This document shows positions 8,232 to 46,131 of a DNA stretch of 64,000 nt, in pieces. Where the stretch lies: assembly GCA_964187785.1 (NCBI GenBank), contig OZ076415.1, positions 13,454,001 to 13,518,000 of the forward strand, given 5' to 3'. The stretch's first letter is position 1. Every line of letters begins with the position of its first letter. Origin of the DNA: Amphiscolops sp. MND2022 (Eukaryota). The notes beneath the pieces were generated by a model. That model made no database searches. It had not been told where the DNA came from and saw only the letters and a program-made list of their open reading frames with translations. The translations under genes and the position numbers were made by a program.

Positions 8232-8446
8232 CTAGTGTTTTACTGAGCTGAAATTCAGACGCCAGCTTCGTTTGGTTCGATGTTTTGTCCACATACGGCG
8301 GACTCCTGGGTCCCTGCATCAGGTTGCCTCCCCTCTCAGGAGTAGTAAGAGGGTTGAAAATATTTCTGTTCACTTTCGACCTCATTTCCTGACTTCTCGC
8401 TGGTCCAGCACTAGATGAAGATGGCTCTGGCAACTGCTGACGGGGG
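8232..8446 (-). CDS. Candidate host-gene exon (third in window), disordered Ser/Pro-rich peptide
   Basis: Acceptor ttttgttatttacag|, donor CTAG|gttagc, 215 bp stop-free in frame (PRQQLPEPSSSSAGPARSQEMRSK...LSKTL), about 51% GC, phase-compatible with exon 28155-28218. Confidence 0.6.
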
Positions 8447-9178
8447 CTGTAAATAACAAAATTTTACAAACCTAGTTTCACATAGTGAGTAAGAGAGTCG
8501 GTAAGAGAGTCGGAAACGGAATTAAATAGTAAACGTCAAGTTAGGTTTTGATGCCATTGCGCATATAGGACGCTGATACGGTATAGAATGATTGTAAAAA
8601 AATCGTTAGAATCGCATTGGAAGTTTTTTTAAAAATTGAAAAACCCAAAAAGGTTTACAAGCGCTGCTCTTCGTATCCATCGCAGCCAAAAGATCTCGGC
8701 AGCACGATACTATTTTAAAAGCAGCCGCTAACTAGTAATTTAATCGCCGCTTTAAATCGAACCAACTTCATTTTCAGTTTCGTCACTTTTAGAGTGCAAT
8801 GATGACATAAATTGAGTAATGGAGAAACTAAAAATTGGGAAGTTTTGAAACGAAACGATGACGTAGATGAAATATATCCATGTTTTGGTTGTAAATGTTA
8901 CACTGCATTGCAATCATTCAAAGTGATTTCGAATAGTTCACTAAGGATACATTAAAATCTGGCCCTCAGCTGAGTTAGAACCACGCTTTCATGCTTTAAA
9001 AACGCATGCTAACAACTAGGCCGAGTAGTATAAAGTTTCCAGTTGTTACATGGTGCTAGATCTCAATCAATCCCATCCAACATCTTTTATTGACAGCATA
9101 GTACTTGGCTGAGAGTATTGCAATTTAGTTCCAAGCGCTGACCTAATTGACTATCACGTTAAACTTACTATTGATTTT

Positions 9179-9492
9179 TGAAGTACTTGTATGTTGTTGG
9201 GAATGTTATGTTATTTCAGATTAGAGATGTTCAGTACTGTTAAGTACTTCAAGAAGACGCTAGCAGAGCTGCAGTGTTAGATCTAAATAAAGCTCACAAC
9301 TTTCTGGTAGCACGTTTATTTCAGATGTGTTGTGGATATAAATGAAAAGTGCTTCACATTTTTAGATTATGTGATGAATTTTAAAGAGCATATAATTCTT
9401 CAAAGTGCCTACATGCAAGTCTAGATGTTTAGACAATTCAGACAAAAGGTGGGGGATGCATCAAAAGGTATTTCATCAAAGGTATATCAACA
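9179..9492 (-). repeat. Solo/chimeric LTR of the element B family
   Basis: Minus strand TGTTGATATACC...GTACTTCA. Homologous to 26574-26878. No PBS, PPT or matching TSD next to it. Confidence 0.85.
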
Positions 9493-10058
9493 CAAAAATT
9501 TTTCCGCGACTCTTTTATTAATAATCAAGATTGAGGTTACAACACCAATAATTCAGAAAATTTTTGAAAAAAAATGCTAGAAGTTGATAAACAAGAGGAG
9601 TACGTTTAAATACCCATGCGCTCTAAGGCTCATGTCGTCTAATGCTCAAAAAGTGCAAATTCTCGTCGAAATGCTCAGGGCGGTTTTTGTTGACTTTCAG
9701 CGCGGTGTGAAAATATTCCAAAGGGCAACATGTGGCCAACTGAAAGACAGTTTCTGCGAATGTTGGTCGCATACATTCTGTGGTAGTACCACTGAAGAAA
9801 ACTGTGTTAGCCGAACATATTTTCTTACGAAATACGCCAACTAAAAACTATCCCGTTTGACGCTACAAAACACTTGGGAAACCGAAAAGAAATCGGCCAT
9901 GTTGTTGATGAATTTCGTTTGTGAGTTCCCGGGTTTCCCTTCCATACAAAAACAGGTCAATCATACTCTGCCATCATACTCACAGTGTGATTCCAGGCTG
10001 ATCATACTCTGGACCATAAAGGTTTTTGGTTCCAGGCTTACCATACTCTGGACATATA
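9493..10058. repeat. Duplicated copy of the flank of B's 5' LTR (matches 26879-27541)
   Basis: Near-identical sequence (caaaaatttttccgcgactc...ctctggacatat) with two indels. Ends inside the foldback repeat. Confidence 0.9.
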
Positions 10059-11499
10059 TGGTCGTCGCAATGCTAAGGGCGGCTTTTGTTGACTTCATCC
10101 GACCGGGTTTTAAAAAAATATGAGGAAACTCAAAACTTAGAAATGTGTGTTGGAGTTCGGAGAAAGGATGTTCTGGTGTAGTTTTAATTAATAAGAAGAG
10201 ATGGTTTTAAGTTTCTGGGAAGCACAGGAAGGTTTATAATATTTTCTACGAGTAGAGTTTCAACTATATCTCAAGTCATATTTTCGAGTTATAAATATAT
10301 CTTGATATTATCCTTTCTGTACGTGAGACTAGAGCAACATGCAATTTCTAGCTTGAAACAATTCGAGAGAGGTGGGGTTAATAATAATATTCTTTGGGTT
10401 CGAGTCGAATTCGAAATAGTGTAAGGATTTGAATAGGTTTTCTTTTTAGTAATAGAAATCAAAGTTTTAAATTTTTGCATGTTTTTGTGTAATTACATCG
10501 TTTTTGTTGTAGTGAGTTGATCTTTTTACTTCGAGCAGCGTTTGAAATATATTTGACGTTGAAGTACCAGGAACAATTTTCATGTCAACTTAAGCGCTCA
10601 TCTTGACGTCATTTCTGAGAAACTAAATCAGAATTGGTATTGAGGCGCTTCAGTACCAGGTTGGCAGCCTGGTCAAAATTGAAAATTGCGAGATAATTAC
10701 ATTGCGTTCACGGATTGGCTTGTTGTTGATGAGAGTTGAAATCATGTTGGGGAGTCATGGGCGCAAGGGCTTCAATTTTAATGATGATTAGTGCAGGGGA
10801 TGGTGGCGGTTGAGGAAATGATTCTTTTATTTGACAAAGACGGTCGGGAAGATGTAAGCAGATTTTGGGAAAATTAAGATTATTTTATTATGGGGTTATT
10901 TATTTAATAATTATTTAAATAATAATAATTTTTTTATTTCTTATTATTATGGTCTTATTATGGGGGGATTTGAATAGTGAGGGGTTGACAACATATTTGC
11001 GTAAAATGCAAAGATTTAAAGTTAGATAAGCGTGAGGATAGTTACTGATTGATTAGCTATTTGGTTCAAATCAGTTGCAATTGAATTTAATTCAGTGAGT
11101 TGTTTTGAAAACAGTTCGTCTAAATACTGTTCATGTTGCTTGAGAGCGTTGTTATAGTTTTCAAGTTTTTGTTCTTATACTACAGAGTGGACATTTTTTT
11201 CGTTGCAGAGCCTGCTTCACCTGGGGCAAATGAGGGCGTTTCGGGTGACGGGGCATACAATTTTGTAGTTTTGTGGTTAATCCTCTGACAGCGGGGCGCT
11301 GTTGTAGTAAGGAAATAATAGCAACAGCTTTTTTTGTTTTTTTGCAGACAGTGCTTCGGGTGTTTGTGTTTAGGTTTTTTGTGATGAAGTTTTTATGCGA
11401 TAAAGAAAATATCAAGAGGAGTGAATGAAACGAAGCGGTATTGCTTGAAGAAAAACAGCGAAACAAATGGGTTATTGGAGTGTTAAAACGAAGAACTAG

Positions 11500-12963
11500 A
11501 CTGAAAGCAATGTGTCACGTGTTTTGTATTCTGTATTAGTTTGTGTCTTTTATCTGTTGTTGTACTGGTATGGTGTTTTGTTGAAAGATGTTAGGCGGAG
11601 AGTAGTATGAAGAAAACAAACCTGAAAAAGGAATGAATGATCCAAAAGATTCTCAACTTGGAAAGTCAATTTGAGATCAGAACCAATCTTATATTTCCTA
11701 ATTTGGATTCACGGTGACATTTAGAAAGGAGTGAAGATATGAAGAAAGTGCAGTGAAGGGTGAAAAAAGAGGGGTTAAAGAAAGGGCAGGAGAAAGAGTT
11801 AATACTCTTTGGTTGAATACTCTGGTTGAATAGAAGTTGGAGGGGGAACATGAGAAAGCTCAGGCGTTGCGGAAAATGGAGGGATTAGTTTAGACGAGGC
11901 TTTGTAGATTTCTTCAGGAAAATTAGTAGTAGCTGGAAAATACTTATCTTGTTTCTTCAAACGAAAGAGGAGAGTTTTTCAATAACAAAGTTCGGTTGAG
12001 CAGTAGAAAATTGTTCATGTACAAGTGAGGTGCATGAAGAGCGCGTGTGGTCATCAAGATGTGTTTCAACAAGTTCATTCATTTTGGAGTTAGGAACACT
12101 ATTAGGAATTTGAAAAGTAGGAAGGAGAAAACCATCGTTTGAATAAAGAACGAACTGAAGGCGAAGTCAATGGTGATAGGGCGCAAGTATTTAAATCTGT
12201 TTAACAAGGTAATGAGTAAGGATTATTCCGATGGTTGGTGTAGAGGTGGTGTGAAGAGTAATGAGAGTGGTAGGAGAAAGGCGAAGTGAATTTGTGGTTT
12301 TGAAAGATATAATTTTGAGGATGTTTTTGTTCGAGGATAGGTTGATTAGTTTAACGATGAAGTTTCTTGAGTGAACGAGCGGTTGTGATGCCGTTCGGGT
12401 TTGTATAAAGACCATGTTGATGTGGTATTAAAAACGTTGAAGTGAAATTGGAAGAAACGCATTCGTTTTTGTTGCCAGAAGGAGAGTTGTTCTACTTTCT
12501 CAGATGCATTGGCGACAAAAAGATCAAATTTACGGTCTTGGTGGAAACGGAATATTTAGGTAGCAGGAGTCATATAAAGAGAAGGAAGATTAGCTCTAAA
12601 ATTGAGATGAGTGCGTAGAAGTTTCTCAGTCATTGTATTAGGTTGGGAGGGTTTTTTACAAAGAAGTAGAGTAGGAGTATTATTACCAGAACAAATGAAG
12701 GCAGGGTCTTCGAGAAAATAGTATTTTTTCTTTTGAGGAAAACTATAGGTACAATTATCAAAAGCAACTCGAGGATTAGTAGGCGGAGGAGTAGGAGTCT
12801 TAAGGGTTGAAGAGAGAGGTTGATTATAATAAGTAGAAACACTTGAATATGGATTGGAGGAACATGATTGAATGATAGGAAGTGTTGGTTCAGGAGTTGA
12901 ATCAGAAGTGATAGGAGCTGGTTCAAGTACCTGGGTTTGGAGTTCAATCCTGCCTGATTTCAA
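11500..12963 (-). pseudogene. Unknown accessory ORF remnant downstream of env in element B
   Basis: Long, nearly open frame: RVAFDNCTYSFPQKKKYYFLEDPAFICSG...LRTHLNFRANLPSLYMTPAT*IFRFHQDRKFDLFVANASEKVEQLSFWQQKRMRFFQFHFNVFNTTSTWSLY, and later LRLQFVLYSNDGFLLPTFQIPNS...HLDDHTRSSCTSLVHEQF. No family recognised. Confidence 0.5.
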
Positions 12964-15900
12964 TGCGAGACAATATTGCCTGAATTCAATGCGAGAGGTG
13001 GAGACAGAGACGGGATGTCAGAAAGAAGTTCACCATGGTAAAGGAGAAGTCATTTTTAGAGGTTTCTTTCGAAAGATGATTTGCGTTAAAATTTGAAGAT
13101 ATACTAGTGTAGAGTACAGGAAATGTGCAGTTTGATGACAGATTATACAATTGAGAGTGAGAATGCGGTAGAAACTGTTAAAACTGTTTCAGTTGATGAA
13201 TGATTATATAAGTGAAAAGATAGATGAAAATGCGTACTATTTTGACTCGAAAATTCTTGATTCTTTGAAGAGCAAAATAGAGGAAGAGAAAGCATCGTTA
13301 CTCAATGGGATGCAGCGAAAAGTGACCAAAAGTATTGAACAGAGAGGTGGTTATTTTGTTGAGGTGGAAAGCACAAGAAGAAAAAATTATGAGAGGGCTT
13401 TTAGGTTGGTTAAAGATACTATTGACAGAAATTGATGGGAAGTCATCAAACTTCGTTGGTGGTTGCGTAGGCGGAGAAATTTTGGTTGAGCCACAGTTTT
13501 GTTTACTGGGGAATTATTAGAGGAGGTGTCAAAAATGGTGTTTTCAGGAGAAGTAGAACAATGTAATTATGGGGGTGATGTCATTGGGGGTGACTTCAAA
13601 TTATAGTAAGGAAGAGGAAAAGAATTAGAAGATTATCGAGAGAAATAGAGATTAAAGGCAGAGATCTTAGCTAGGGATTTAAATTTTAACCGTTCATTAT
13701 CTTAGTTTTAAAACTAGGGTTTTAGTCGGATTTGTATTTTTCAAAAAAAAAGTATTATTAGTAGGTTTGAAGAAAGAGGTGGAGGTGATTCTGAATCATT
13801 ATCGTCAAAATCGGAACTGTCTCCTAGCTGTCAACATGGTTTTTGTTTCGGTTCCAAAAAAAACAACCTAATGCCGAAAATTTGTCTTTTAGGAAATCTT
13901 TTAACAGTAAAAGAGCAATGTAATTTGAAGAGGGCATTGAAAGCGAATTGTAAAAAAAGCAAAGGCAAAAATATTCCACAATGAGCTAAAATACAACAGG
14001 GCTAATCAAAAATTTAATGAAAGCTTCAGTGAACCATTCAGGGGTGAAAAAAGAAAGTTGGGTTTAACATTTAATGTGAAGCCCAAGTCGAAGAGATTCA
14101 GGAAGAATATCAAAAAGGTGTTCAGATGATTGTAAAATCATAACTTCATAACTAATAGCTTTTCCAAAGAGTTGGAGTGTATTATCAGAATGTTTTGAAA
14201 AAAACGCATTTCCAAAATTGTTTTACTTCTTTTTGAGAATGAACACCTGCTTCTTGGACGGTAAAGGAGCTAGGGCAGTTTGAATTTGAGTAGGTTCAAA
14301 AATTAGTAGTAGCTGGAAAATATTTATCTTGTTTCTTCAAACGAAAGAGGAGAGTTTTTCAATAACAAAGTTCGGTTGAGCAGTAGAAAATTGTTCATGT
14401 ACAAGTGAGGTGCATGAAGAGCGCGTGTGGTCATCAAGATGTGTTTCAACAAGTTCATTCATTTTGGAATTAGGAACACTATTAGGAATTTGAAAAGTAG
14501 GAAGGAGAAAACCATCGTTTGAATAAAGAACGAACTGAAGGCGAAGTCAATGGTGATAGGGCGCAAGTATTTAAATCTGTTTAACAAGGTAATGAGTAAG
14601 GATTATTCCGATGGTTGGTGTAGAGGTGGTGTGAAGAGTAATGAGAGTGGTAGGAGAAAGGCGAAGTGAATTTGTGGTTTTGAAAGATATAATTTTATTT
14701 TTACCAGTATATCTGGAGTATTATTACCAGAACAAATGAAGGCAGGGTCTTCGAGAAAATAGTATTTTTTCTTTTGAGGAAAACTATAGGTACAAATATC
14801 AAAAGCAACTCGAGGATTAGTAGGCGGAGGAGTAGGAGTCTTAAGGGTTGAAGAGAGAGGTTGATTATAATAAGTAGAAACACTTGAATATGGATTGAAG
14901 GAACATGATTGAATGATAGGAAGTGTTGGTTCAGGAGTTGAATCAGAAGTGATAGGAGCTGGTTCAAGTACCTGGGTTTGGAGTTCAATCCTGCCTGATT
15001 TCAATGCGAGACAATATTGCCTGAATTCAATGCGAGAGGTGGAGACAGAGACGGGATGTCAGAAAGAAGTTCACCATGGTAAAGGAGAAGTCATTTTTAG
15101 AGGTTTCTTTCGAAAGATGATTTGCGTTAAAATTTGAAGATATACTAGTGTAGAGTATAGGAAATGTGCAGTTTGATGACAGATTATACAATTGAGAGTG
15201 AGAATGCGGTAGAAACTGTTAAAACTGTTTCAGTTGATGAATGATTATATAAGTGAAAAGATAGATGAAAATGCGTACTATTTTGACTCGAAAATTCTTG
15301 ATTCTTTGAAGAGCAAAATAGAGGAAGAGAAAGCATCGTTACTCAATGGGATGCAGCGAAAAGTGACCAAAAGTATTGAACAGAGAGGTGGTTATTTTGT
15401 TGAGGTGGAAAGCACAAGAAGAAAAAATTAAGAGAGGGCTTTTAGGTTGGTTAAAGATACTATTGACAGAAATTGATGGGAAGTCATCAAACTTCGTTGG
15501 TGGTTGCGTAGGCGGAGAAATTTTGGTTGAGCCACAGTTTTGTTTACTGGGGAATTATTAGAGGAGGTGTCAAAAATGGTGTTTTCAGGAGAAGTAGAAC
15601 AATGTAATTATGGGGGTGATGTCATTGGGGGTGACTTCAAATTATAGTAAGGAAGAGGAAAAGAATTAGAAGATTATCGAGAGAAATAGAGGTTAAAGGC
15701 AGAGACCTTAGCTAGGGATTTAAATTTTAACCGTTCATTATCTTAGTTTTAAAACTAGGGTTTTAGTCGGATTTGTATTTTTCAAAAAAAAAGTATTATT
15801 AGTAGGTTTGAAGAAAGAGGTGGAGGTGATTCTGAATCATTATCGTCAAAATCGGAACTGTCTCCTAGCTGTCAACATGGTTTTTGTTTCGGTTCCAAAA

Positions 15901-16345
15901 AAAACAACCTAATGCCGAAAATTTGTCTTTTAGGAAATCTTTTAACAGTAAAAGAGCAATGTAATTTGAAGAGGGCATTGAAAGCGAATTGTAAAAAAAG
16001 CAAAGGCAAAAATATTCCACAATGAGCTAAAATACAACAGGGCTAATCAAAAGTTTAATGAAAGCTTCAGTGAACCATTCAGGGGTGAAAAAAGAAAGTT
16101 GGGTTTAACATTTAATGTGAAGCCCAAGTCGAAGAGATTCAGGAAGAATATCAAAAAGGTGTTCAGATGATTGTAAAATCATAACTTCATAACTAATAGC
16201 TTTTCCAAAGAGTTGGAGTGTATTATCAGAATGTTTTGAAAAAAACGCATTTCCAAAATTGTTTTACTTCTTTTTGAGAATGAACACCTGCTTCTTGGAC
16301 GGTAAAGGAGCTAGGGCAGTTTGAATTTGAGTAGGTTCAAAAAAT
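11919..16345. repeat. Tandem duplication inside element B (2380-bp unit followed by a 2041-bp unit)
   Basis: 11921 matches 14301 (offset 2380) and 12674 matches 14715 (offset 2041). The second copy lacks 12317-12673. About 9 substitutions seen by eye. Confidence 0.97.
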
Positions 16346-17860
16346 TGAGGAGTCACTTTTAACTAGGATATGGAGTTGAAACATAATTTCGATCGGTATC
16401 AGGATGAAGTTGGAGCAAAGACATTTTGAGGATTATTTTCACAAGGCATTTGGTTAGCATCATCAAACGTTTTGGCGAGTATTAGGATCAACATACATGA
16501 CAGTTTCCAGATAGTTTACAGGCAGTTTATCGTAAAATTTGTTCAACTATATAAAAAGGAGAAAGATGGTCTGGTCAGTCATAGAGCCAGGCGGTGGAGC
16601 CTTCAATATATTAAAAGTTCCTTCGATTTTGTGTGTGAGGAAAACCAGCTGATTGTGGATTTTTACCGGACATTGCAAGAATAGTTCGGAACTGAGCGCG
16701 TCCAACTTCACAAATACTGTGGAGGATGTTAGCTTCAGCAACTGCCATTGTTTTGAAAACATAAATAAGGGAGTATTAGATATTAGTATTGATGTGGGCT
16801 TCATAATCATTATTAGCGGAATTAATGGAAAGTTTCAACGCAGGAAAGAGGGGTTTATTTTGAGTTTGCACTAAATTACCAGAGATTAATTGAGTAGAGT
16901 GGCGGTCATAATGTTCATTTGAATGTAGTTGAAGATGATGACGTTGACCAGTGTGCAATATTGAGTAGTATACATAGGTGTAGGTTTATTACAAAAAATA
17001 TTTTCGGGGACAAACTCAAAACAAGAAAGACAAGTTAGCGAAATTGAGTCACGATAAGGAGTCTCAAAAGGATTATTTGAGAAAATGTTTTCAAAGAAGT
17101 GTTGAGTTTAAAGTGTTCAGGAAACCAAACATTGGTGAAGGATGTTATTGTAATATCTTTATCATCATATGTGATTTCGATTCCTTCAACATATGAGGAC
17201 CAACTGTCTTTTTCATTTATATGTTCATTGCGGTTCCAACACACAGCTTTTTCGGTAAGAGTTGCGTTTAAAACAAGTTGAGAGTTTGTTATACAAGCAA
17301 ACACACCAAAATGAAAGATGTTAAATTTAGTTATACGAAAAGGAGGTGGTTTTTTTTGAACATCATAGGGGTACTGTAACCAAAAGCATTAACTTGGGTT
17401 TTTTTAGTTTGTTTACATACCGTAGGATCTAGAGTAAGAGGACGTTCCTTGGTGTTTTGATGATAATCAGTACGATCATGACGACGATAGTTGTAATCGA
17501 ATTCTGCACATACAAATTCTTCACATTTAACATATGCTTCTCAGTTCCAGGCTTTAAGACATTTAGCTTGAGCACAGCCAAAGACATTAGAGATAGCACG
17601 AGTGATTTTTAAAGAAGAAGGAGCTTGAGCACAGATTTTCTGGGAAAAGTTGACAAGTTTAAAATTTGCATGTATAACACAAGTACTCAGTGGAAGGTGT
17701 TTCAAGTTTTGAATGAATAGTTTCAAAGTGAAGTTTGAGTTAAAGAGGAGATCCAGAGGTGGGAGAATTTAAAGTGGGAGAATCCGCAAAGCGTGGAAAA
17801 ATATTTTGGAAAAGGAATAGACTTAGAAGATTAGCAAGGTAAAGTGTTAAAAGAAGAAGC
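15800..17860 (-). pseudogene. env: env-like membrane glycoprotein remnant (candidate class III fusion protein)
   Basis: Hydrophobic N-terminal leader (~17800-17870); Cys-rich ectodomain fragments; NAT sequon; HSICEVGRAQFRTILAMSGKNPQSAGF; YDKLPVNYLETVMYVDPNTRQ; C-terminal hydrophobic segment CGIFLPLLFLQFAFNALFKL (~15960-16020). Directly downstream of INT. Confidence 0.75.
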
Positions 17861-18199
17861 ATGATCGATAGAATTTTGGAACATTTCTTAATCTGAATCA
17901 AAAGAGTCAAAAGTGATATCTTGGGAGTCATAGTTAATATCAAAATCAGGGCGGTTGTGATATTGAGTAGATGAGGGGGAAATACTTTGGTATTGTGAAA
18001 AAACTTCAAATGAAAAGTTTGAATTGAAAGGGTCAAGTAGTTTGTTTTGATTAAAGTCAAAAATTTGGGACAGGTTATCTTGGTGAGAATCAGTATCAGG
18101 ATTGTTAAGAAGTGATGAAGTGGGGTGGTATTGACGTGATGGAGAGGAGTGATATTGGCGAATATAAGGAAAAAGACCACGTGCATTGGGGTAATAACA

Positions 18200-22521: not shown

Positions 22522-22524
<3 letters not shown>

Positions 22525-26571: not shown

Positions 26572-26573
26572 GT

Positions 26574-32500: not shown

Positions 32501-32837
32501 AGTTTCCAGTGTTATTAACAGAGTACTTCACAGAAATTTACTGACGAAAGTGATAAAAGCTCATGAAAGTTTTACCATCTCAACGAGTTTATTCAGTCCA
32601 ATATGATTGACTCTTCAATTTGTCAAAATAATTTTTGATCTTTCAAGTGATGATAGCAACTCTCAGTCATCTAGGAAAACAGGTTTCACATACTAAATAA
32701 CTCTCATTTCATCCCAAGCAAGCATAGAACCTTCAAATATGATCTTTTCAAACCGCTAACAAGAATTTGAAAACTCAGTCCTACATTTTTTATGAAATTT
32801 TACTGCATAAATTTTTTGGGTAGAGAACAGTAACTTT
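29504..32837 (+). repeat. Left arm of a 3.3-kb inverted repeat (decayed coding-like sequence)
   Basis: Reverse-complement homology to 34313-37714 along its whole length, roughly 80% by eye, with a perfect 112-bp block at 32650-32761 / 34393-34504. Confidence 0.9.
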
Positions 32838-34312: not shown

Positions 34313-37300
34313 AAAGTTACTGTTCTCTACCCAAAAACTTTATGCAGTAAAATTTCCTAAAAAATGTAGGACTGAGTATTCAAATCTTTTCGTGTTAGCG
34401 GTTTGAAAAGATCATATTTGAAGGTTCTATGCTTGCTTGGGATGAAATGAGAGTTATTTAGTATGTGAAACCTGTTTTCCTAGATGACTGAGAGTTGCTA
34501 TCATTACTTAAAAGATCAGAAACTAGGTTGACAATTTGAAGAGTCAATCATATTGGACTGAATAAACTCGTTGAGATGGTAAAACTTTCATGAGATTTTA
34601 TCACTTTTGTCAGTAAATTTCTGTGAAATACTCTGTTAATACCACTGGAAACTAAAGAAATCCTCTCTGGCCTCTGGAGTTAAACAGGACTCACTTGTGT
34701 TGGTTACTCTTAACGTCCAGGAATTTTCTCCAGTTGAAAAAGTTCCACCTGTTCACTTTTTTGACGGGTTGTGATTTCCTGTGGTTTCTTCCAAGCTATT
34801 TTTTTCTTTCTTTTTTCTAGTTTTATGCTTCTATATGTTTTTTGAACTTACAGTTATCACAATTACAGGCTATGTGAGATTATCAAAAATTTATTATTAT
34901 CACATTGGAGAGGCAGGCAACAAAAATAGAAATCCATGAGTTTTTCCCTGATTTGACGTTTTTTATCAACAAACTTTAAAAAATCTTGGGCAATTGCAGC
35001 TGTCATGTATTGATTTTAATATCGTTGCTATGTCAATTATAGTAAACTTCTCTGATGCTCTTCTGGAATTCTTGGTATATTCGTTCCAACAAACTCAACA
35101 GTTTTTTACCATACTTCGGAAACTGTCACTCAGTTCTTCGGTTTGACTTATTTGATCAAAAAAGGAGTGTTTAAAGCTTTGCTTTTTGTAAAAGCTCTTC
35201 CGAATGCTTTTTCGCTTCCCAGTTTTTTTTCTTCGGGAGAACACTAAGAAGTTGAATTAGTTGAAGTTCAACCACTCAGTAGAAGTTAGTTTTGAGCTTC
35301 GCAAATCCAATTCATCATAATTCAACTTCCATGCTGCATCTTGTGCTCTGTAAAGTTCGACGAAATGAAAGTAAAAAAAGGTTTTGTTCTTTTTTTGGAA
35401 TCTAATGGAGTGATATTCAAACATCCACAAAAGTGTATTTTGTTGTCGAAATGTTGCTGTATCCCTTTTTACAAAATAGAAAGAAGTTGCTGCTTTGGAC
35501 GTGGTTTTATTTGCTGTGTTATTCACAAGGTTTTTCAATCAGGTCGTTCAAAATTTTTTGGGTTGAACATAACTTCAAGATAATCATTTTCAATGGATAA
35601 ACCACCACAACAATGAAGTAGATTATTCGGTTCAATAGGTAAAACAATGATAACATTTTTTTTGAAAACATATTGCTAGAACTTTTTATTTCGAAAGTTG
35701 TCGAAAAGAAATTATGGAATTTTTTTCATCTTTTATATCATGAGTTTTTCATATGTTTCAAGCATTTACCAGTCTTTGTCGGTCAGTCCAAAGTCAGCCA
35801 ATTGTTGTTCGGTTAAACGAGTTGCTGTAAAAGGTTAAAGCGGTGTTAGCTCTTCAGTGATTTTAAAAGATGTATACTGTATAACTTCTGAACCTGGTAC
35901 TCTTTGATCCATTTTTCTGGGAACATTAGAGTTGGCATCAAATACGAAGGATTAGTTTTTTTGTAATTTTTAATATATGAGATTTGGAGAGTTTTCCCTG
36001 ATCTGAAAGAATAGTTTAATAATATAAGTTCATAATTAAAATTTTGAAACTGATCGAAAAGACCGAGCAAAAACAACAAATATAGTGAGAAACACAATTG
36101 ATATAACGTTTCTGCTTTTACGACATAAAATGCTGCCTTGGATTTCGAGTAATTCTTCCCGTCAAAAATAAAAGATTTCCATCAGTTAATACATAAATTC
36201 CTGAGTAGAACACTATTTGAAAAGACTCATTTTCATTTGTTATTTCAACACAGTTTACTGACCAATTCTTTTCAAAAGTTAATGTTTCAATACGCATTTT
36301 TGCTAAATTTTCGAAATCGTTTCTGGTTACTATTTAAGATTTTAAAACACGTTTACCGTCTACTGTATTTTGCAGTTAAATAACCAAGTTCACGAAGTTG
36401 TTTACCGGTTGAACGATTTTGGAGGGTGTTAGTGTTTGTGAGGTTTTTTTCACTGTGTTAAAGGCTTCCAGAAATTTTACTCCAAATATCTACTTTTCTC
36501 CGAAATTTAGGGTTGTATTTAACGAAAAAACATAATTGTTTGTTTGTTCATCACATTCTTCCTCCTGATTTTTAGAAAATTTTTCCTTTTACTAGATGAA
36601 ATTTTGAAATCAAAAGTGAAACATATAACAGTGAGCAGCACATTGAGAATCTTTTGATAATGTTTTGATCATTTTTCAGATAATTTGGTAAACTGTGCAT
36701 GGTAACGGTGGACATAAGAAATCTATTTGTTTTGTTGCTTCTTTTTAGGATGTGAGTCAATAACAAAACCATTATGGTTGAAAACTCATTTTTTGAAAGA
36801 AAACTTCTGACACAGTCACTTTCGGTTAAGGCCCTCACATTACTTGTGGTAAGTACACGTTCCGTCTTTGAAAACAAAGCCGTTTTCACTGAAAAAATTT
36901 CCAAAATGTTTGACCTCTGTGGTTCGACATCTTCGGAAAATCCAAAAACGAATCTATTTGATAACTAGAAGCGACTAAAAGTCAAAGTGTTTTTCAATTG
37001 TCAGTGGACAACATCTCGGTTCAGATACAATGTCTTCTCTTACTCTGATTCTTCAAGGTCTTTTCAACAATGAAGAACATGCATCTTTGTTGACTCGTTC
37101 AATCAGAAATTTTTTTTAAACCCAACAAAATTGATTCAACATTGCAAAAGTCAGGTCAAGTGCTAATAATTATCGTTAAGGATAGCCAGAAACAACAATT
37201 CCAACTCTTTTAAGTTTGTTTCAGCAAAAATGGTATTCTCTTTTCGTTTTGAAGCTTCTGGAATTTTCCAACAAACCTTAAGAAAGAACTGAAATAAAAC

Positions 37301-37714
37301 TTCTACAAATCACTAGATCCCTCCTGATGGGGTATTAGAAGGAAGGTTATTCACCAGACGTAACAATCGTTCCTCTTGAAAGAGAACAATAACTTGAATC
37401 TTGAAATCTTGTAAAAGTTTCCAATATTACTTTCAAAACGCTGGCAAAAAAGTCGGAGCTGCTTGCATTTTACATAACTAATCATTTGGAAAATCAGACT
37501 ATCAGCCACGTTGTTGTTTCAGTCAGCGCAGTTCAAAGGAAATGTTCCCGACTACGGAAATGTTTGTTCTTCTAAATTTAGATTCTTCAAAAATTAAACT
37601 GAAAACCAGTAGCAGGCACACTTACCGAGCAAACAACCGGTCGGTTCCATGCCTGCTTAGGACTAGACATCGGTTTGCAAAACCTAAAAGTGTCAGTGGG
37701 CCACTTTAGTTTTT
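34313..37714 (-). repeat. Right arm of the 3.3-kb inverted repeat
   Basis: Mirror of the left arm. Shared translated remnants such as KT(A/V)EFV.T..P.IPE.HQ.S and YMTAAIA.DF.KFV. Confidence 0.9.
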
Positions 37715-40149
37715 TCTCGGCACTGTGCGACTATTTTTCCAAACAAATATCACGAACTATCACGACTCCCCTTTTGAAGATTTTGGCCACTCTGAGTTTA
37801 ATTACCAGATCTCCAAAGCCTACTTGGGTATAGTGAATAGATGAAGACATTTTTGACCTTCAAGAAAAGTTTTAAAAAACAGGTTTTTAAAGTTCGGCTT
37901 TTTTGATACTTTTCCAAAAGTAATACACAGTCAGAATCTAATTCTTTGAAACTTGGATCCAAGAAATTTTGAATGTGATGAAACCAAAAGCAGCCCGGCA
38001 CTTTTTTATTCAACACTGTGAAATCTTTTTCAGTAACCATTTATTTATGAGAAATACTCTTCTTGCAGCAATTCATCAACATTTTTCACTTTTTCTTGGA
38101 CAATTGTCAAATGTTGCAGGTCACATTGTTATGTTACTCGGTGTAAAAATATGGCTTAATGTTGAAGTAGGGATATTTTTGTTAGTTGGTGATTGGAAAG
38201 ACAACGACTGTTATCCATTACGCAATGTAACTTTAGACAATTTTTATCCATTGAAATCATGCGTCAGTAAAAGTTACTAGCATCAAAAGAAAGTATCAAG
38301 AAGCACATTCAATTCAACGTTGGTAAATGAAAGCACTTTTTATTGATTACATTTCCGTTCATTCCGGTTGCGTTCTCTTTCCATTTCTAAAGAACCACTC
38401 CTTCCATTTTCTATTATTTTCTAGCACGCAAATGTAAAAAGAACTTTACTTTTATTGCTTGAAACAGCAAAAAAGTTTTCCAGGCTCGTGTTTTCAAGGT
38501 TGTGTAATTTTGTTTCGGTTTCTAGTCGCTCCTCCGTGAGTGAGAATTTTTGACATTCGGCCACGTCATCGTGTTGCAATCATGACGTTGTTTTGGAGTC
38601 CGCGTTTTGACAATATTTGGTTACCCCCCCCCGCCTATAATGCCACGTACTTCTACAACTGAGTTTCAGTTATGTGATCAGAGCCAACATCAGTTAAGTG
38701 ATTGTATTGGCACCTTGGCTGAGGGTTATCAGTAATTTCAACAGTGAATGTGTTACTGAACTACGTTATCCTCGTTTTCTTTATTTGTTTCTCGGCTGAT
38801 CATACTTTGGACTAAAAAGAAAAATGGTTCCAAGCTGACCATATATGCAGTTATGGAAAAATTATATGCAAATTTGGACAATATGAATTTGCCTGCAGGA
38901 TTCTTCAAAGATCGTTGCACTGAAGAAACTCACCGATCTGGAGAACTTTTACAGAAGTATGCCAACTTGCACTTACTTTGAAGATTTTTGCTTGAGGTCT
39001 TCCAGCAGCTTTCAAAGAACCTTTGTACTGCCTTTTTGGACATATTCAATTACTTCTCTGTCATGCCAGCATGATGTACATATAGTTCGATTTTAAATAT
39101 AAGTATATTGACACTGCCAACCAACTGTAAACTTAGTGTAAACAACCTGCCACCCTTTTTCCCCCAGAACTAACGGAAGACTGTCAAAGCTCACACTGCG
39201 ACACCATCTAACTGAACAATTGGCCACTGTCTCAAGAGTCTCCTGAATCGATGTGCATGTTTGTTGTAGAACTGGAAATAACCCTTGCAAATCAGAATGA
39301 CGATGCCAGAAAAGTTATGAAAAAAGAAAAAAACGATGGAAGAAAAAACAATGAAATTAGTACGACCAGTGAGACAGCAGCAAGCTGAGCCTCAAAACTG
39401 ACTCATTTTTTATCTACATCTCTTTTCCAACGCCTGAGAGATGCAGTCGATGATGCATCCATATATTGATGCAACGTGATGCAAGTTTTCCATCACTTGT
39501 ACAACACTCAATCGGTTAACTCAGTTGCTAACAATGTGTTGATTGAAGCCTACCAATGACGCAGTTAAAACCAATGCCCCATTCAGGTACTCCTTACTTA
39601 CTGCAAAGTAATCTTACTTGCTGGTTCTAAATACCACACAATCTGAAGTGCGCTGGATGATTTCCATCGCTTGGACATCAAGTAATGCAACCAATTTACC
39701 TTTGTTAACTAAACTGGGAGAAAGAAGAAAGTATTCTACTGTCTACATGGCGTCTTTTGATTTTAACCACTTGAACATCATCATTTTTATATCGTTTGCT
39801 GACATTAGCCATATTGCAGTAATTCAAGTATGATAATCATCCAACGTGAGACCTCATTATTTTGACGTTAATTGATTTTAATAGAAACTCAGCGCCCAAT
39901 TTGGGTTGGCAAATCCAGAAGACGACAAGGTAATCAATCACATGGTCAAAAAAATCTTGCACGTTTGTTGGAAACTCAATGAGAGTGCAGGGCTGTAAGA
40001 AAAACGTCTTACCACCAATCAACAAAAAGCTACCAACGAACGACAATTCTGAAGTTTGATTGTCACTGTCTAGCAGCCATCGCAAATTTATTTTTCAACA
40101 TTTTTAGAATCACACTGCCTAACTCAATTTTCTGCCTGCAAAATCTAGA

Positions 40150-43100
40150 AACAAAGATTGCAGAAGCCCCATACCATACTTCTCAAAACACATGTCTCAA
40201 CATTCGGAGGAGCAAAGGACAAAGTTAATGATTTTGAGCATCTCTTGCTGTCCGACTTCAAACCACTTACGCCAACACGGAGGAAGACAAAAGCCACTTC
40301 TTCCAAAGACTATTGCCTGACGAAGCCATTGTTATTGGCAAACGATCTTTGAAACACCACAACAGTAAAGGATGTCCTATTGATGTTCCGGTAAGAATTA
40401 CGCAAAGAGACATGCGTGAAGTTGCAGAGGACGTCAATAAAATCGTCAAACAATCGTATGGCGGAGAAAATCCCGAAACAATCAAGTACCTCATTGGACA
40501 AGTACCCTACCAGAGAAAGAACAATGAGAAAAACAACGAGAACAGATGACACTTGAAATGACAGCAGAGTTCTTTGAACAAACTTGAAGCATAAATTACA
40601 AACGACAAAGTGTCCCCTGATGAAAAACAGAATTTTCGACTTCTGGGCGCCATAATTTCGACCCGTGTCTCATCAAAATGCGCACACCATTTCCTACTCA
40701 AAAACTACTCAAACAGAACACGTCTGACACAAACATCACAAAAAGACCTGACAGGGTTATATCAACTCTAAGAAAGCAGACGAAAGCTAACCTAAAAAAA
40801 CGATAATCAACCGATGAAGCTGATGACGTTCAATAACAAGAGGCGAATAACTCCTTTGAAAGAGTCTATCAAAGAAACGATGACCTGGCAAGACGCAGTA
40901 ACCAGGCATGCGAATGATACCAAAGAGATAACCCTTCATCTGGCGACAACGGGACGAGGACTTCGAACTCCAAACAACTCTTCAAAGCCGTTGAGCATTC
41001 GTAAACATGTATCACTCTGTATATTTTGAGCCCCACAATACATCTAAACAAAAAGGATAAAATAAAGATGTTCTCCTTGACCTCATTGTCTTCTGTGTCC
41101 TCGAAAACCATTCAGCAACCCCCCCCCCCAACCACAAGACAACAAATCAACGGAAAATTCAAAACCGGCTTAATTGATATGTATTCAAGCTGCTGCACCA
41201 TCATTGTTCGCCGCCACCAGGTGTTAATTCAGGTCAACAAGCACACTTACACGCTTGAAACAAACATCACCTTTGCAAATTTCCGAAATCCATCAGCTTA
41301 CCAGGCAGCCAACATCACCAGCGCAGTGGAGCACGCAAAGGTGGTCACAGAACCACGACCAACTTTTTGTGATTCCTGATAGGAAGTCAATTTAATTATA
41401 ACCGACACAAGAGACGTGCCGTGAACTTGATAAACTTGATCAAATGAAGCGATTTCTATGAAATTCAGGTACTACGACAAAATGAAATGGTTGATCCGGC
41501 ACGCTCCCACGGCGAAAGAATCGAGCTCCTGCTGAACTTCAAGTAGGACAAATCACTTCTACATCCGTGTCAACAAGCTTGGGTAGAGACGTTGCAAGTA
41601 ACATACATATCCAATTTTCCTAAACATCGTTTAGACAATGAGTTTGAAGTGAAATTAACACAAAATTAGGACGAACCCATTTAATCTCAAAATGTCTCTA
41701 CTCATTTCCCCGGTACTCCTTGTAGAGTTAGCACTAACGCGGGAATACGGAATTAGAAACACTCTTCCTCACAGCAAATACTAGTCCCCCATTTTTGCCC
41801 AACGTAAATCAATTGTTATATTTAGTATTTTAGTTTACTTGAAACGAATCAACCACTTGGTGAAAAGTGACTACGGAGAACACTACCAACCCGTTACATC
41901 TGTTTCAGATGTTTTTTTTGGAAACTTGATTGTTTCCAGACCTATCACTGCATCCCAGACAGTTAATGTCGTTTAACTTTAGCTCATGTACCTTCGCTTT
42001 TCTTAGACTAGCTCAAATATTTAACCGTTCTCTCTCAGCATCTTCAGATTTAGTCTCGGATTATTGGTCAAAGCGGACCGCGTTGCCCAGTACGTTGGTG
42101 ATAAAGGCATAGTCGCTAACACGCTTGATGAAATAATTGAAAATTAAGTCTTGGTTTTTCAGCACTTGTCATAAGCTGGACTGAAACTCAGCATGAATAA
42201 TTGTGAATTTGGCCAACAGAACACTGATCACTTAGGCAGAAGTATCTCAATTGCAGGTATCGCCCCAATTGAATACCGTGTAACGGATGATGTGCAGATG
42301 CTCAAATTCCCCAATGCAGTCAAAGCACTCCTGAATTTCACGACTGGCGAGAAAACAGCTGTCCCCCATGAAATACCTTAAAGCTCAAAGATCACTACCA
42401 TTATCTGTAAGGACGCAACAAATGTGTAACTTTAGAAATTATCAAAAAGTTTGCTCAAATCAAATAAACTGTCACCGAAAGCTCAACTTCCGGATAAACC
42501 AGCAATCATCATGTGTGACGCGAGTGATCACGGAGCTGGCTACATCCTTTTAATGGATGATTACTGTGAAGCAAACTCGGGTAAAGAACAATGCATGCCC
42601 CAGTTGCTTTCGGCTCTAAGAAGCTCTTGGATGGCCAGATGTCCGTCACCATGTACGCCAAAAATTTTCATCAATGCACATTTATCTTGATGAATTCGAG
42701 GACATTTATGGGGTGGAGAAAACCTACAGACATCATGACAGGCAAAAAAGCACTCACGAACTCAATTTTTTCAGGCCAAAGATATACCACTGTCACTTTA
42801 GAATTTTTGTGACAAGACACTTCTAATCAATTTTCTATTAGCATATGTACCAGGTGTGGAAAATCTCGCAGAAACATATCTATCCAATTCGGAAATGGGT
42901 CCTAAAGAGTATTTACATTCGAAAATGACTAATTTTGTTCCAGTTCACCGCGCAGAAGCCGATATACCCTCAAATGCGCTGAAACAGGAAGACGATGAAA
43001 ATGACTACTTCCCACCAGGCGACTCATTGAGGCATAGGTTTAAGATGGCAAACCGATGAACTCAACTACCCTTTCTGAAGAGCACATGGACTATGGGAAA

Positions 43101-44990
43101 CCGATGACGACAACCATCACGTGAACTGACGATGGCAAACCGAAGTTTGCAGACACTACGCAAATGGCCTCTGAGGATATATCAACCCAACAACCCCATA
43201 TCTACCAACTGATGCCTCACGCACAGTCCCCGATATACACCAGATTCATCGCTGTCGCATCGTTACCTAAACCCGTATTGAGTGAGGTTAGTCTCTCAGG
43301 GATTACATCTTACTTTGTGCCAAAAAAGATAGTGACATACAACTGATGATAAATTTTTTCTCTGGTGATATTCCTTTAATCACCCTCTGAACTTAATGTG
43401 AACATTTTTTCCAAAATTCCAGTAAGAACCCAAAACGCCATTACAACGTGAACGCAATTTTGTATCGTATTGTTTACGACCAGACTTTGAGTCCCAAAGG
43501 CAACTTGTTTCCGGTGAAGTAGAGAAGGGCATTTTCAAGACACTGCACATCAGTCCGGTCATTACAATACATTTGCCGCAAAAGTGGAAATTATCATGAA
43601 TAGTAAAGTGTATTTTCCGAAAACGAGAGTGAGCCGTATTCTAGTCAAACAGTCCTTCGTGTTCACGAAGTATTATGATGCACAGTGTAATCAAAAGTTG
43701 CGAATTGTGATCATTGAGAGTCTTTAGAGAAAAGTGGAAAACAGTCAAGTATTTTCGATCTGAAATCCGTAGCGCCAATAAAGTGTAAATGAGTCAATGT
43801 TTGACAGGAATTGAGTTTTTGAGTACGTGAAATTTTTATTCCTTGAAAACGGGGAAATTGAACGAAATTTGACTACTTTACAACAAACAAACAGTACATC
43901 CTATTGCCTTCTTATTTGGAAAAACGCTTCACCTTGTAATTGCAGTCGGTATTTAGTTTGACTGTTTTACACTAGTTAGAATAATTTACAGCATGTGATA
44001 CTTACATTTGACTGTTTTCCCCAAATGATTGTTTTCCAAAATACACGGTGCATGGACAACCTGGCTCCACAGAGAAGCTATACAATTTTGTGAACAAAAT
44101 ATCACCACCATTGCAGACACTCTAGGACCAGTGCAATGGTCCTGAGTATATGTTAGAGGTAAAGATCGTTGCACCACTACCTGCATTCAGCGAACACAAC
44201 CACATCCTAACCGCTACAAACATTTTCTCTATTTGCTGGACCGTTTAGACAACCTGACACATTATCGATCGTACTTGCACTACTGCCAATTTTAACAAAA
44301 CATTTGTACGTTCCGACCCAGTTCATAACCGACAACGGATCCGCCAGTACTGATCAACTGTTCGAACAAAAACTTACCAAAGCCGCCGGCATTAAAATCA
44401 CACATTGAACAAATAAACATGCACAAATCAAGTTCATGGTCGACAGAAGTCAAGCAAAATTTAAAAGATTTTTAAAAAAACAAGTGGATGGAGACAGACT
44501 ACAAAGGTAGCGCTATGTCGCCCATAACACCACATATCACGCTTCTCTGAATAGTTGCCCATCAAAGTTTTGCACACAATACTCCAACCCTGCAAAAAGA
44601 AATGACACCAATTTCGGGGAACTTAACAAAACACTGGACCAAATGAAAAAACTTTTTCATGACAACACTAAAAACAATGTCGCTGCGTACCAAAAGTACA
44701 AAGCGTATTTTGACCAAAATGCTAGAGCTCAACCTCTCAAAGTTAAAGACTCCGTCTTGCTGTTTTATCCCAAATACTACCCTCCGGAATAAAGGGAGGT
44801 AAAACAGTACAACATTCCACTGGAAAGGGCCGTTCAAAGTGCTTTCCGACAGTAACAGCATTGTTAGGAAGGTTCGAACGTTGAAAACACAATGTGTGCA
44901 ACGAATACCAATACAAGTATTCAAACTGGAATTTCTAATAGACAACATGGAAAGAGAAAGTTCTATTTGACATCTATCATTTAAGTGCAA
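40150..44990 (+). mobile_element. Degenerate Ty3/gypsy internal region D (different lineage; LTRs not found)
   Basis: PR-like LIDMYSSC (~41170); RT PIFAQRK and SFNF..CTFAFLRLAQ; YVGD at 42091-42102; RH IIMCDASDHGAGYILL and APVAFGSKK; INT YVPTQFITDNGSA (44328-44339); WKGPFKV at 44821-44841. Confidence 0.88.
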
Positions 44991-46050
44991 TCAATACACT
45001 GGGAAAAAGATTAAACAAAAACCAATCAATGGTGCTACAAGGTTTCAGGTGTCATTACAGTGCATCTGCAAGCTTTTTCTGAGCGTTTTGCGGTAATCAG
45101 GACACGAAATCTCGGAAAATGAGATGACTGCACTGAATTCATTCCGCTTTGATGTCGACTGCCTTAGCTTCCTTAGAAGTTGATATCCAACGGTTGATGC
45201 TAGAGGCCTAAATTTTTTGTTGCATGACATTTCGTGCGGAAAAAGCGACAGTATCAAACTGATCACTAAATGCTGTTTTTATTTCCATATATCAAAAGAA
45301 AACACGACAATCGCTCAAATTTACTCCTAAATTTGAAGTTTCAACCCTTGAATCAAAAGCCTTTTGAAAGCTCTTTTGAAGCAAATTTTCTCCGGAAAAA
45401 GTTGATAACTTGAAAATTTTCCAGGAAAAAAATGGAAATTCTCCAATTCACTGACGACATTTTTCTCAACATTTTTCTTCTATCGAATTTTTGACTGTTG
45501 GTCATGATAAGGAGTTGACAGTTGATAAATTCATTGGACGCATGGCTGCAAGGAAGTCACTGCGATTTTGGTTGAGTAATTTTTTTCAGAATGAATCGTA
45601 TGAATTTTCAAATTTTCAACAGGAGAAGTCTTTCAAACAAATGCAATAGTTTTTTATTTAAAGGTGCATACTTAGCTCACGGAATGAAGAGTCAAGAGCA
45701 TTCGGTGATCTTTCGGGTGTTAGGCCATCTGAAACGAAATGTGTTGAAAAAAACACATAGATGAAACGCGCCAAATTAGTTCCTCATAACCGTTCCAATG
45801 TGTTGCTACCTATTGAAACAAAAGTCATAAAGTGTTAGGTTTATACTTTTAAATTCAACGTTTAAACGTTGATTTTCGCACCACCAAAATGCGTTTTCAA
45901 GATTTCACAAAAGTTGTGCACTCCAAACAAATTGGCAGTGCCGGAAACGTGATTGAAGAATTCACACACTAATATTGGCAAAGCAAAACTGAAATTTTCA
46001 AGTAATAAGGAAGAAACGTGAATGCTTTTGGAACACTTTATCGGACTTAC

Positions 46051-46131
46051 CCATTTTGAGCTTTGTCGGCGATTCCGGTTCTTCTTCTTCTTCTTCACCT
46101 TGTCTTTCTTCGATTGCTCCCACATCCCGTT
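46051..46131 (-). CDS. Candidate host-gene exon (first in window); 5' boundary uncertain, may be 5' UTR plus start codon
   Basis: Perfect donor AAAATGG|gtaagt. Either an 81-bp phase 1-1 exon (RDVGAIEERQGEEEEEEPESPTKLKM) after a cag| acceptor, or a first exon with ATG in CAAAATGG context. Contains a (GAA)n run. Confidence 0.55.

What the first reader, a model, noticed from the sequence alone, without database searches (positions are those of the whole stretch)
8232..46131. Cryptic host gene: three phase-matched exons spliced across 17.8-kb and 19.7-kb TE-filled introns
Seen in sequence: minus-strand exon 46051-46131 ends ATG G|gtaagt (phase 1). Exon 28155-28218 starts AT and ends AG|gtatgg (phase 2). 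Exon 8232-8446 starts C and ends G|gttagc. Joined, they give one open frame: ...EPESPTKLK-MDGGKRVSSTTGPATGIGGAYRSPRQQLPEPSSSSAGPARSQEMRSKVNRNIFNPLTTPERGGNLMQGPRSPPYVDKTSNQTKLASEFQLSKTL..., with several S/T-P sites. Two exons are about 51-55% GC against AT-rich surroundings, and all three lie between repeats. The ORF track misses this because of splicing. Inference: introns of 17832 and 19708 bp are built almost wholly from TEs. Elements A and B are in sense orientation to the gene, which is usually disfavoured for LTR insertions. I do not recognise the protein family.
Basis: inference. Interest (0 to 1): 0.7.

Follow-up and report, generated by a model that had tools for sequence, protein, structure and literature searches.

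The report
Possible small gene with transposon-swollen introns
Three short GC-rich pieces on the minus strand do join into one open reading frame with good splice signals across two huge transposon-filled gaps, but nothing outside the sequence itself yet shows that this 95-codon gene is real, so it is a plausible but unproven and fairly ordinary gene model.

Summary
All coordinates, splice motifs, phases, the joined peptide and the intron lengths (17,832 and 19,708 nt) are as described. The signals beat chance modestly:
- Exon 3 is the strongest GC island in the 64 kb.
- Its acceptor and the first two donors rank in the top 1% of sites.
- Only 2.5% of shuffled exon sets stay open in any frame.

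Two corrections:
- The third "donor" is weak and not needed. Reading on gives Gly then TAG (8229-8227), so a complete 95-codon CDS (ATG 46054) fits inside the window.
- Exon 1 is not uniquely determined. There are 17 phase-compatible alternatives, and an out-of-frame AUG at 46125.

Intron 2 is 93% one degenerate env-bearing Ty3/gypsy element in sense orientation; without it the intron is about 1.35 kb. The N gap lies inside that element, not in an exon, but it separates exon 3 from exons 1-2. A matched LTR pair and colinear pol remnants support the join.

No homolog, family or transcript-derived protein was found. The host is probably an acoel with no annotated proteome in the databases, so these negatives are weak.

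Verdict: plausible lineage-restricted small gene, about 50%. Low interest.

The parts
46051..46131 (-). Proposed exon 1. AG acceptor-like site just upstream (TTTCATCAG|AACGGG), ATG at 46054-46052 in CAAAATGG context, donor G|GTAAGT after 46051. An earlier out-of-frame ATG lies at 46125-46123.
   Evidence: (donor ranks 33rd of 7,299).
28219..46050 (-). Proposed intron 1, 17,832 nt. It holds a 9.5-kb inverted duplication (29363-32844 against 38832-34307, about 80% identical) and a weak RNase H-like pol remnant at 42451-42690 (+). The rest is unclassified.
   Evidence: (RT_RNaseH_2 E=0.002, below Pfam cutoff).
28155..28218 (-). Proposed exon 2: 64 nt, 54.7% GC, acceptor TTTTTTGTAG|, donor AAG|GTATGG. 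It lies in a 1.5-kb unique segment between LTR-terminal motifs.
   Evidence: (top by GC of 27 candidates).
8447..28154 (-). Proposed intron 2, 19,708 nt including 200 placeholder N. About 1.35 kb remains once the LTR element is removed.
8227..8446 (-). Proposed last coding exon: acceptor TTATTTACAG|, 72 codons plus stop TAG at 8229-8227. Highest GC island of the window.
9178..27542 (-). Degenerate env-bearing Ty3/gypsy-type LTR element filling intron 2. LTRs at 9178-10059 and 26573-27542. A TGG primer-binding site lies just below 26573. Remnants: RT at 21126-20688, integrase at 18867-18228, env-like at 16892-16030 and 14306-13989. Internal tandem duplication at 11919-16343.
22253..22452 (.). 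Assembly gap (200 N) inside the LTR element, followed by (AT)42 at 22453-22536. Not filled.
1..7740 (-). Older related LTR element downstream of the gene, in sense orientation. Primer-binding site at about 7527, LTR tail 7534-7740, RT remnant 2575-2131. It continues left of the window. The first ATTAAA after the stop codon (7645) lies in its LTR tail.
46216..46939 (.). Foldback or MITE-like element that starts 85 bp upstream of exon 1.
   Evidence: arms 70% identical over 189 nt.

Best explanation
A small, lineage-restricted protein-coding gene lies on the minus strand and is complete within the window.

Proposed structure (inferred):
- A short first exon is either transcribed from a start near 46135-46210 or receives a spliced leader at the AG before 46131. 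It carries the start codon ATG 46054-46052 just before a consensus GTAAGT donor.
- It is spliced to a 64-nt exon (28218-28155), and that to a terminal coding exon (8446-8227) ending at TAG.

Proposed product (inferred): 95 residues, basic (13 K+R against 6 D+E), with no Cys or Trp, rich in Ser, Gly, Pro and Thr. It has three Ser/Thr-Pro sites and an R-N-I-F motif. It is predicted to be unstructured apart from a short C-terminal helix, so it most likely acts as a disordered phospho-regulated protein carrying linear motifs.

Introns: they were once ordinary in size. Intron 2 is about 1.35 kb without its insert. LTR-retroelement insertions swelled both to 18-20 kb, as expected in a genome that is about half LTR elements.

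Shown here: the sequence anatomy, the TE map and the statistics. Inferred: transcription, splicing, translation and function.
For: - One frame is open across all three pieces. Only 2.5% of dinucleotide shuffles achieve this.
- Donor 1, donor 2 and acceptor 3 are in the top 0.5-1% of all GT or AG sites in the window.
- Exon 3 is the top GC island. The open frame starts within 17 nt of its acceptor, and the stop coincides with the end of the island.
- Exon 2 is the most GC-rich of only 27 candidate internal exons.
- The ATG sits in an A(-3)/G(+4) context directly before the best donor.
- All three exons are unique in the window and in about 190 kb of extra sequence from the same sample. They are 100% identical in independent contigs.
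- Removing the single LTR element leaves a 1.35-kb intron.
- The host is probably an acoel. In Symsagittifera roscoffensis the genome is 36.7% GC, half LTR retrotransposons, and 30% of genes are SL trans-spliced (PMC9911081). That fits long TE-filled introns and an acceptor at the 5' end of exon 1.
- AlphaFold gives no fold (pTM 0.19), only a C-terminal helix.
Against: - No related protein was found among 5.8 billion clusters of 39-124 aa, nor among 1.84 billion representatives of any length (the one hit is a spurious repeat protein).
- No Pfam family, no PDB relative, and no tblastn match in JGI metagenomes.
- Three-base periodicity is not above the window's background.
- An out-of-frame AUG at 46125 precedes the proposed start if exon 1 begins at 46131.
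- 17 other first-exon candidates fit the phase.
- Acceptor 2 is mediocre.
- There is no AATAAA or ATTAAA within 580 nt of the stop.
- A full-length LTR element in sense orientation within intron 2 would be expected to truncate transcripts.
- Exon 3 and exons 1-2 are linked only through a scaffold gap.
- The single difference in exon 3 between the two available copies is non-synonymous, Tyr to His at 8295.
Confidence: 0.5

Rival explanations
1. There is no gene. The three pieces are a chance chain of GC-richer unique fragments between transposons, which happen to carry AG and GT motifs and an open frame and were picked out by eye from 128 kb of two-strand sequence.
For: - No homolog, family or transcript-derived protein was found.
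- An 11% chance that exon 3 alone is open, and 2.5% for the join, is not extreme after a visual search.
- Periodicity is not significant.
- There are 17 alternative first exons.
- Acceptor 2 and the third donor are weak.
- There is no nearby poly(A) signal.
Against: - Several independent features coincide at exon 3: the top GC island, a top-1% acceptor at the start of the ORF, and a stop at the end of the island.
- Exon 2 is the best of only 27 candidates and is on the same strand, upstream, and in a compatible phase.
- The database negatives are weak. No annotated proteome of this species seems to be present: all exact matches are ORF calls from one ENA assembly.
Confidence: 0.25
2. Exon 3, perhaps with exon 2, belongs to a real or formerly real gene, but the model is wrong or the gene is dead. 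Either a different 5' exon is used, or the gene is a relic disabled by the 18-kb sense-oriented retroelement.
For: - Exon 1 is not uniquely determined and has an upstream out-of-frame AUG.
- Sense-oriented LTR elements bring poly(A) and splice signals and are generally counter-selected in introns (established knowledge).
- The LTRs are 3-9% diverged, so the insertion is old.
- The only exon difference between the two copies is non-synonymous.
Against: - The 95-codon frame is intact across all three pieces.
- The exon 1 donor and its ATG context are the best among the alternatives.
Confidence: 0.15
3. Exon 3 is transposon sequence: the 5' (U3) part of the 5' LTR of the left-hand element. That element's LTR tail and primer-binding site lie at 7740-7527.
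For: - The related intron-2 element has a 965-nt LTR. An LTR of that length ending at about 7530 would start near 8495, just upstream of the exon 3 acceptor.
- The gene's only nearby ATTAAA lies in that LTR tail.
Against: - Homology to related LTRs stops at 7740 in both comparisons.
- The family's LTR-start motif is absent from 7530-9177.
- No second copy of 7740-8500 exists within 25 kb to the left or anywhere else in the fetched sequence.
- A GC-rich 78-codon open frame preceded by a strong acceptor is not typical of U3.
- The test stays inconclusive because the left element has no recognisable 3' LTR and no other copy at 90% identity or more.
Confidence: 0.1

Closest known systems
Ordinary GT-AG spliced genes of acoel genomes with transposon-expanded introns (for example Symsagittifera roscoffensis, PMC9911081)
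   Same: AT-rich genome (35.8% GC here, 36.7% there), dominated by LTR retrotransposons. Canonical GT-AG sites, few exons, and a possible spliced-leader acceptor at the 5' exon.
   Different: Introns of 18-20 kb are about 7-8 times the reported mean of 2.5 kb. No transcript support is available here. The species itself is not identified.
Lineage-restricted (orphan) small disordered proteins or microproteins
   Same: 95 codons, no detectable homolog, low-complexity Ser/Pro/Gly/Thr-rich composition, no predicted fold.
   Different: Orphan status is not established. The searches had low power for a 71-residue disordered query against billions of sequences, and translation is untested.
Cyclin-docking (RxL) CDK substrates or inhibitors, and the Jupiter/HN1 family (resemblances recalled from memory only)
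   Same: An R-N-I-F motif followed by T-P-E-R, further Ser/Thr-Pro sites, and a C-terminal ...LG end.
   Different: No Pfam family matched exon 2 or exon 3 even at E<=10, and phmmer found no such proteins. This is a lead, not membership.
Envelope-carrying Ty3/gypsy elements (errantivirus-like) with class III fusogen env genes (PMC13524379)
   Same: The intron-2 filler and its sister element have LTRs, RT/RNase H, an integrase SH3 domain and a downstream env-like ORF. That ORF matches Pfam Monjiviricetes_fusion.
   Different: The copy in the intron is degenerate, with all ORFs broken and internal tandem duplications. That survey does not mention acoel or xenacoelomorph hosts.

Membership tests
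Spliceosomal protein-coding gene | Canonical GT-AG boundaries with consensus-like flanks at every intron | tested here: met
   Donors GTAAGT and GTATGG rank in the top 0.5-0.7%. Acceptor 3 is in the top 1%. Acceptor 2 is moderate, in the top 12%.
Spliceosomal protein-coding gene | A continuous open frame from a start codon to a stop codon across the junctions | tested here: met
   ATG 46054 to TAG 8229-8227, 95 codons. The shuffle probability of any frame staying open over the join is 2.5%.
Spliceosomal protein-coding gene | Evidence of transcription and of the splice junctions | not testable with these tools
   No RNA data for this organism is reachable. No protein containing exon 3 exists among the 15 billion predicted proteins, which include run assemblies.
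Spliceosomal protein-coding gene | Conservation of the coding sequence in related species | tested here: inconclusive
   No homolog was found. The nearest annotated genomes are acoels whose Pao pol is only 52-56% identical, and a 71-residue disordered query has little power. The second copy in the same sample differs by one non-synonymous base.
Spliceosomal protein-coding gene | Polyadenylation signal downstream of the stop codon | tested here: inconclusive
   only GATAAA at +89, ATTAAA at +582 (inside an LTR tail) and AATAAA at +1035.
Jupiter/HN1 or Cip/Kip-type families (lead from memory) | Match to the family profile | tested here: not met
   The Pfam scan of the exon 2 and exon 3 peptides gave 0 families at E<=10. 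phmmer found no real hits.
Ty3/gypsy-type LTR retroelement with env (intron-2 filler) | Paired LTRs in direct orientation with a primer-binding site next to the 5' LTR | tested here: met
   LTRs 882 and 970 nt long, 90-97% identical, with TGGTGGGACC directly after the 5' LTR.
Ty3/gypsy-type LTR retroelement with env (intron-2 filler) | RT, RNase H, integrase and env-like coding remnants in the canonical order | tested here: met
   (tblastn with the sister element's ORFs, E down to 1.9e-44). (RVT_1, RT_RNaseH, SH3_Tf2-1, and Monjiviricetes_fusion at E=2.3e-15 in the sister element).
Ty3/gypsy-type LTR retroelement with env (intron-2 filler) | Target-site duplication flanking the element | tested here: inconclusive
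   no matching 4-6 nt duplication was found at the inferred LTR ends, and the exact termini are uncertain.

The most novel reading that the evidence does not exclude
An orphan microprotein gene, restricted to one acoel lineage, is still expressed and correctly spliced even though each intron has been inflated more than ten-fold. One of those insertions is a full-length, sense-oriented, env-bearing retroelement. The host would then have to suppress the element's own poly(A) and splice signals. The gene might also end in the LTR of the next sense-oriented element.
Probability: 0.12. Interest if true: 0.4.

Novelty: new member of a known kind. Interest (0 to 1): 0.2.

Why it matters
If real, it is one more unannotated small gene in a very transposon-rich genome. 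It would also be a tidy example of ordinary introns of about 1-2 kb being blown up to about 20 kb by retroelements without breaking the reading frame. That is useful for annotation pipelines, which tend to miss short ORFs split by very long introns, but it does not change any concept. If it is not real, it is a reminder that GC-rich islands with good splice motifs can be chained by eye into convincing but false genes.

Tried and rejected
1. **Homology searches with the exon 3 peptide.** Word-index search, full phmmer against 1.84 billion representatives, Pfam, PDB and JGI metagenomes all came back empty. The single phmmer hit, P0001, is a 581-aa tandem-repeat artefact.
2. **Weak tblastn match in a Convolutriloba macropyga locus.** The match (L012 9736-9912, 34% identity) rests on a low-complexity QLPEPSS stretch. 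It falls to E=0.18 with composition correction, so I rejected it.
3. **Search for a second haplotype copy of exons 1-2.** Exact-ORF look-ups returned only the same contig.
4. **Search for the left element's 3' LTR**, to test whether exon 3 lies inside an LTR. Walking 25 kb to the left found none. The element has no other copy at 90% identity or more, so the test is inconclusive.
5. **Candidate extra exon at 41302-41375.** It lies within the GC-richer 39-45 kb stretch of intron 1 that carries the weak plus-strand pol remnant, so it is more likely transposon-derived. Including it would shift exon 2 into another frame that stops early in exon 3. I rejected it.
6. **Species identification.** Nucleotide comparison with S. 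roscoffensis and C. macropyga loci found no shared repeats. The S. roscoffensis spliced-leader sequence is absent from the window.
7. **Other scans.** Rfam and tRNA scans were empty. The bacterial promoter and terminator scan is irrelevant here.
8. **Spliced peptide.** I did not submit the joined 95-residue peptide to the database tools, because they accept only contiguous window translations.
Full report
**1. The observation**

Reading the minus strand confirms every sequence statement:
- 46131..46051 ends CAAAATGG|GTAAGT.
- 28218..28155 follows TTTTTTGTAG| and ends AGAAG|GTATGG.
- 8446..8232 follows TTATTTACAG| and ends CTAG|GTTAGC.

The pieces are 81, 64 and 215 nt. Joined, one frame is open throughout and gives the quoted peptide. 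GC is 46.9, 54.7 and 50.7% against 35.8% for the window. The intron lengths of 17,832 and 19,708 nt are correct.

**2. The assembly gap**

N 22253-22452 lies in intron 2, inside an LTR element, and is followed by (AT)42. No exon or frame crosses it. It does separate exon 3 from exons 1-2.

The window is 100% identical to two long-read contigs of ENA assembly ERZ25074608. One ends at window 22068 and the other starts at window 25263, so they do not bridge the gap. I did not look up or fill the missing letters.

Two things support the join:
- An LTR pair straddles the gap: 9178-10059 and 26573-27542, 90-97% identical, in the same orientation.
- Coding remnants on the two sides are colinear with the gene order of a sister element. 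Their spacing is 1,432 nt including the 200 N, against 1,188 nt in the sister.

The join is therefore plausible but not proven, and the length of intron 2 is approximate.

**3. Is it more than chance?**

- Exon 3 coincides with the highest 150-nt GC peak in the window: 0.54, against mean 0.357 and sd 0.052.
- With a generic splice-site PWM, donor 1 ranks 33rd and donor 2 ranks 51st of 7,299 GT sites. Acceptor 3 ranks 72nd of 7,195 AG sites. Acceptor 2 (847th) and the third donor (324th) are unremarkable.
- Only 27 candidate internal exons pass those thresholds on both strands, and exon 2 is the most GC-rich of them.
- Dinucleotide shuffles keep some frame open over the 360-nt join in 2.5% of trials, and over exon 3 alone in 11%.
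- Codon-position composition leans the expected way, with third positions more AT-rich. However, 22% of random windows show as much periodicity.

Taken together, the signals are exon-like but not decisive.

**4. Corrections to the model**

- *The stop codon.* Reading past 8232 gives GGT then TAG (8229-8227), exactly where the GC island ends. A fourth exon is unnecessary. From ATG 46054-46052 (A at -3, G at +4) the CDS is 95 codons.
- *Exon 1 is not unique.* Upstream of the ATG the frame is open for only 35 codons. If exon 1 starts at 46131, an earlier AUG at 46125 opens a 67-codon ORF in another frame that also crosses both junctions. Seventeen ATG-plus-donor candidates on the minus strand are phase-compatible with exon 2.
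- *No nearby poly(A) signal.* No canonical signal lies within 580 nt of the stop. The first ATTAAA (7645) is in the LTR tail of the next element.

**5. The surroundings**

- *Intron 2.* It is 93% one element, 9178-27542 in minus sense. A TGG primer-binding site follows its 5' LTR. RT, integrase and env-like remnants lie in canonical order, and there is an internal tandem duplication. Its sister element at the right end of the window has RVT_1, RT_RNaseH, an integrase SH3 domain and an env-like ORF that matches Monjiviricetes_fusion at E=2.3e-15. This is a known kind of envelope-carrying gypsy element (PMC13524379). Without the element, intron 2 is about 1.35 kb.
- *Left of exon 3.* An older related element lies at 1-7740, also in sense orientation.
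- *Intron 1.* It holds a 9.5-kb inverted duplication, which is 53% of its length, and a weak RNase H-like remnant. The rest is unclassified.
- *Upstream of exon 1.* A foldback element begins 85 bp upstream.
- *The exons themselves.* All three are unique in everything I could fetch.

**6. Could exon 3 be LTR sequence?**

The left element's LTR tail ends at about 7530. An LTR as long as its relative's (965 nt) would reach about 8495, which would include exon 3. Against that:
- Homology to related LTRs stops at 7740.
- The family's LTR-start motif is absent from that region.
- No second copy of the region exists within 25 kb to the left.

The element has no other close copy to compare, so this rival is weakened but not excluded.

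**7. External evidence**

Every homology search with the exon 3 peptide was empty. These negatives are weak for two reasons:
- All exact matches to window ORFs come from ORF calls on one ENA assembly, so the species has no annotated proteome or transcriptome in the collection.
- A 71-residue disordered query needs about 45 bits to pass in a search of 1.8 billion sequences.

The host is probably an acoel. An intact BEL/Pao pol from a second contig of the same sample has its closest named relatives in Symsagittifera roscoffensis and Convolutriloba macropyga, at 52-56% identity. All other named animals are at 30% or below. Published acoel genome features fit this: 36.7% GC, half LTR retrotransposons, mean intron 2.5 kb, and 30% of genes SL trans-spliced (PMC9911081). 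An SL acceptor at 46131 is therefore conceivable.

The second contig is 98.8% identical over window 1-9172. In exon 3 it differs by one base, a Tyr to His change.

**8. The product, if real**

It would be 95 residues, basic, with no Cys or Trp, and rich in Ser, Gly, Pro and Thr. It has three Ser/Thr-Pro sites and an R-N-I-F motif followed by T-P-E-R. AlphaFold gives pTM 0.19 and only a C-terminal helix.

A role as a disordered phospho-regulated protein carrying linear motifs is my inference. The resemblances to cyclin-docking proteins and to Jupiter/HN1 are from memory and failed the profile test.

**9. Verdict**

I put the probabilities at:
- about 0.5 for a real three-exon, 95-codon gene;
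- about 0.25 for a chance chain;
- about 0.15 for a mis-modelled or dead gene;
- about 0.1 for transposon-derived sequence.

Even if the gene is real, it is an ordinary gene in a transposon-swollen genome.

Noticed in passing
L003:9986-19615 (inserted at window 9165-9172; absent from the window): A second contig of the same sample is 98.8% identical to window 1-9172. It carries an extra 9.6-kb insertion with an intact BEL/Pao element (gag 558 aa, pol 1,504 aa), antisense to the proposed gene. The insertion is flanked by an 8-bp duplication. The pol belongs to a cluster of 90 members at 90% identity or more, so the family looks recently active and this insertion is polymorphic or copy-specific.
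   Followed up: partly
L007:19562-20494 (window about 67616 onward); remnants at window 16892-16030 and 14306-13989 (-): The Ty3/gypsy-type elements here carry an env-like ORF that matches Pfam Monjiviricetes_fusion (E=2.3e-15). Envelope-carrying gypsy elements are known across metazoans, but the survey I read does not mention acoels.
   Followed up: partly
window 1-26000 (+0.3 to +0.56) and 56000-64000 (-0.41 to -0.48): There is very strong GC skew that tracks the orientation of the gypsy-type elements. Their sense strand is markedly C-rich and G-poor.
   Followed up: no
window 11919-16343; 59799-60768; L004:8562-16558: All three related elements have recent internal tandem duplications: about 2.0-2.4 kb at 99.5% identity, 484 bp x2 at 99%, and 4 kb x2 at 96.9%.
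   Followed up: no
window 50495-51457: A 112-bp satellite of about 7 to 8.5 copies, up to 99% identical, with a 335-bp higher-order period.
   Followed up: no
window 27467-27716 and 29238-29406: A roughly 39-nt subrepeat (core CTGGAACCATAAA) marks the LTR start of the intron-2 element. It recurs, inverted, at the edge of the 9.5-kb inverted duplication, so exon 2 sits in a 1.5-kb unique island between two such termini.
   Followed up: partly
window 46216-46939: A foldback or MITE-like element (arms about 190 nt, 70% identical) lies 85 bp upstream of exon 1.
   Followed up: partly
whole window: The host is probably an acoel, judged from the nearest named relatives of a BEL/Pao pol (Symsagittifera and Convolutriloba at 52-56% identity, everything else at 30% or below). 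The species was not identified.
   Followed up: partly
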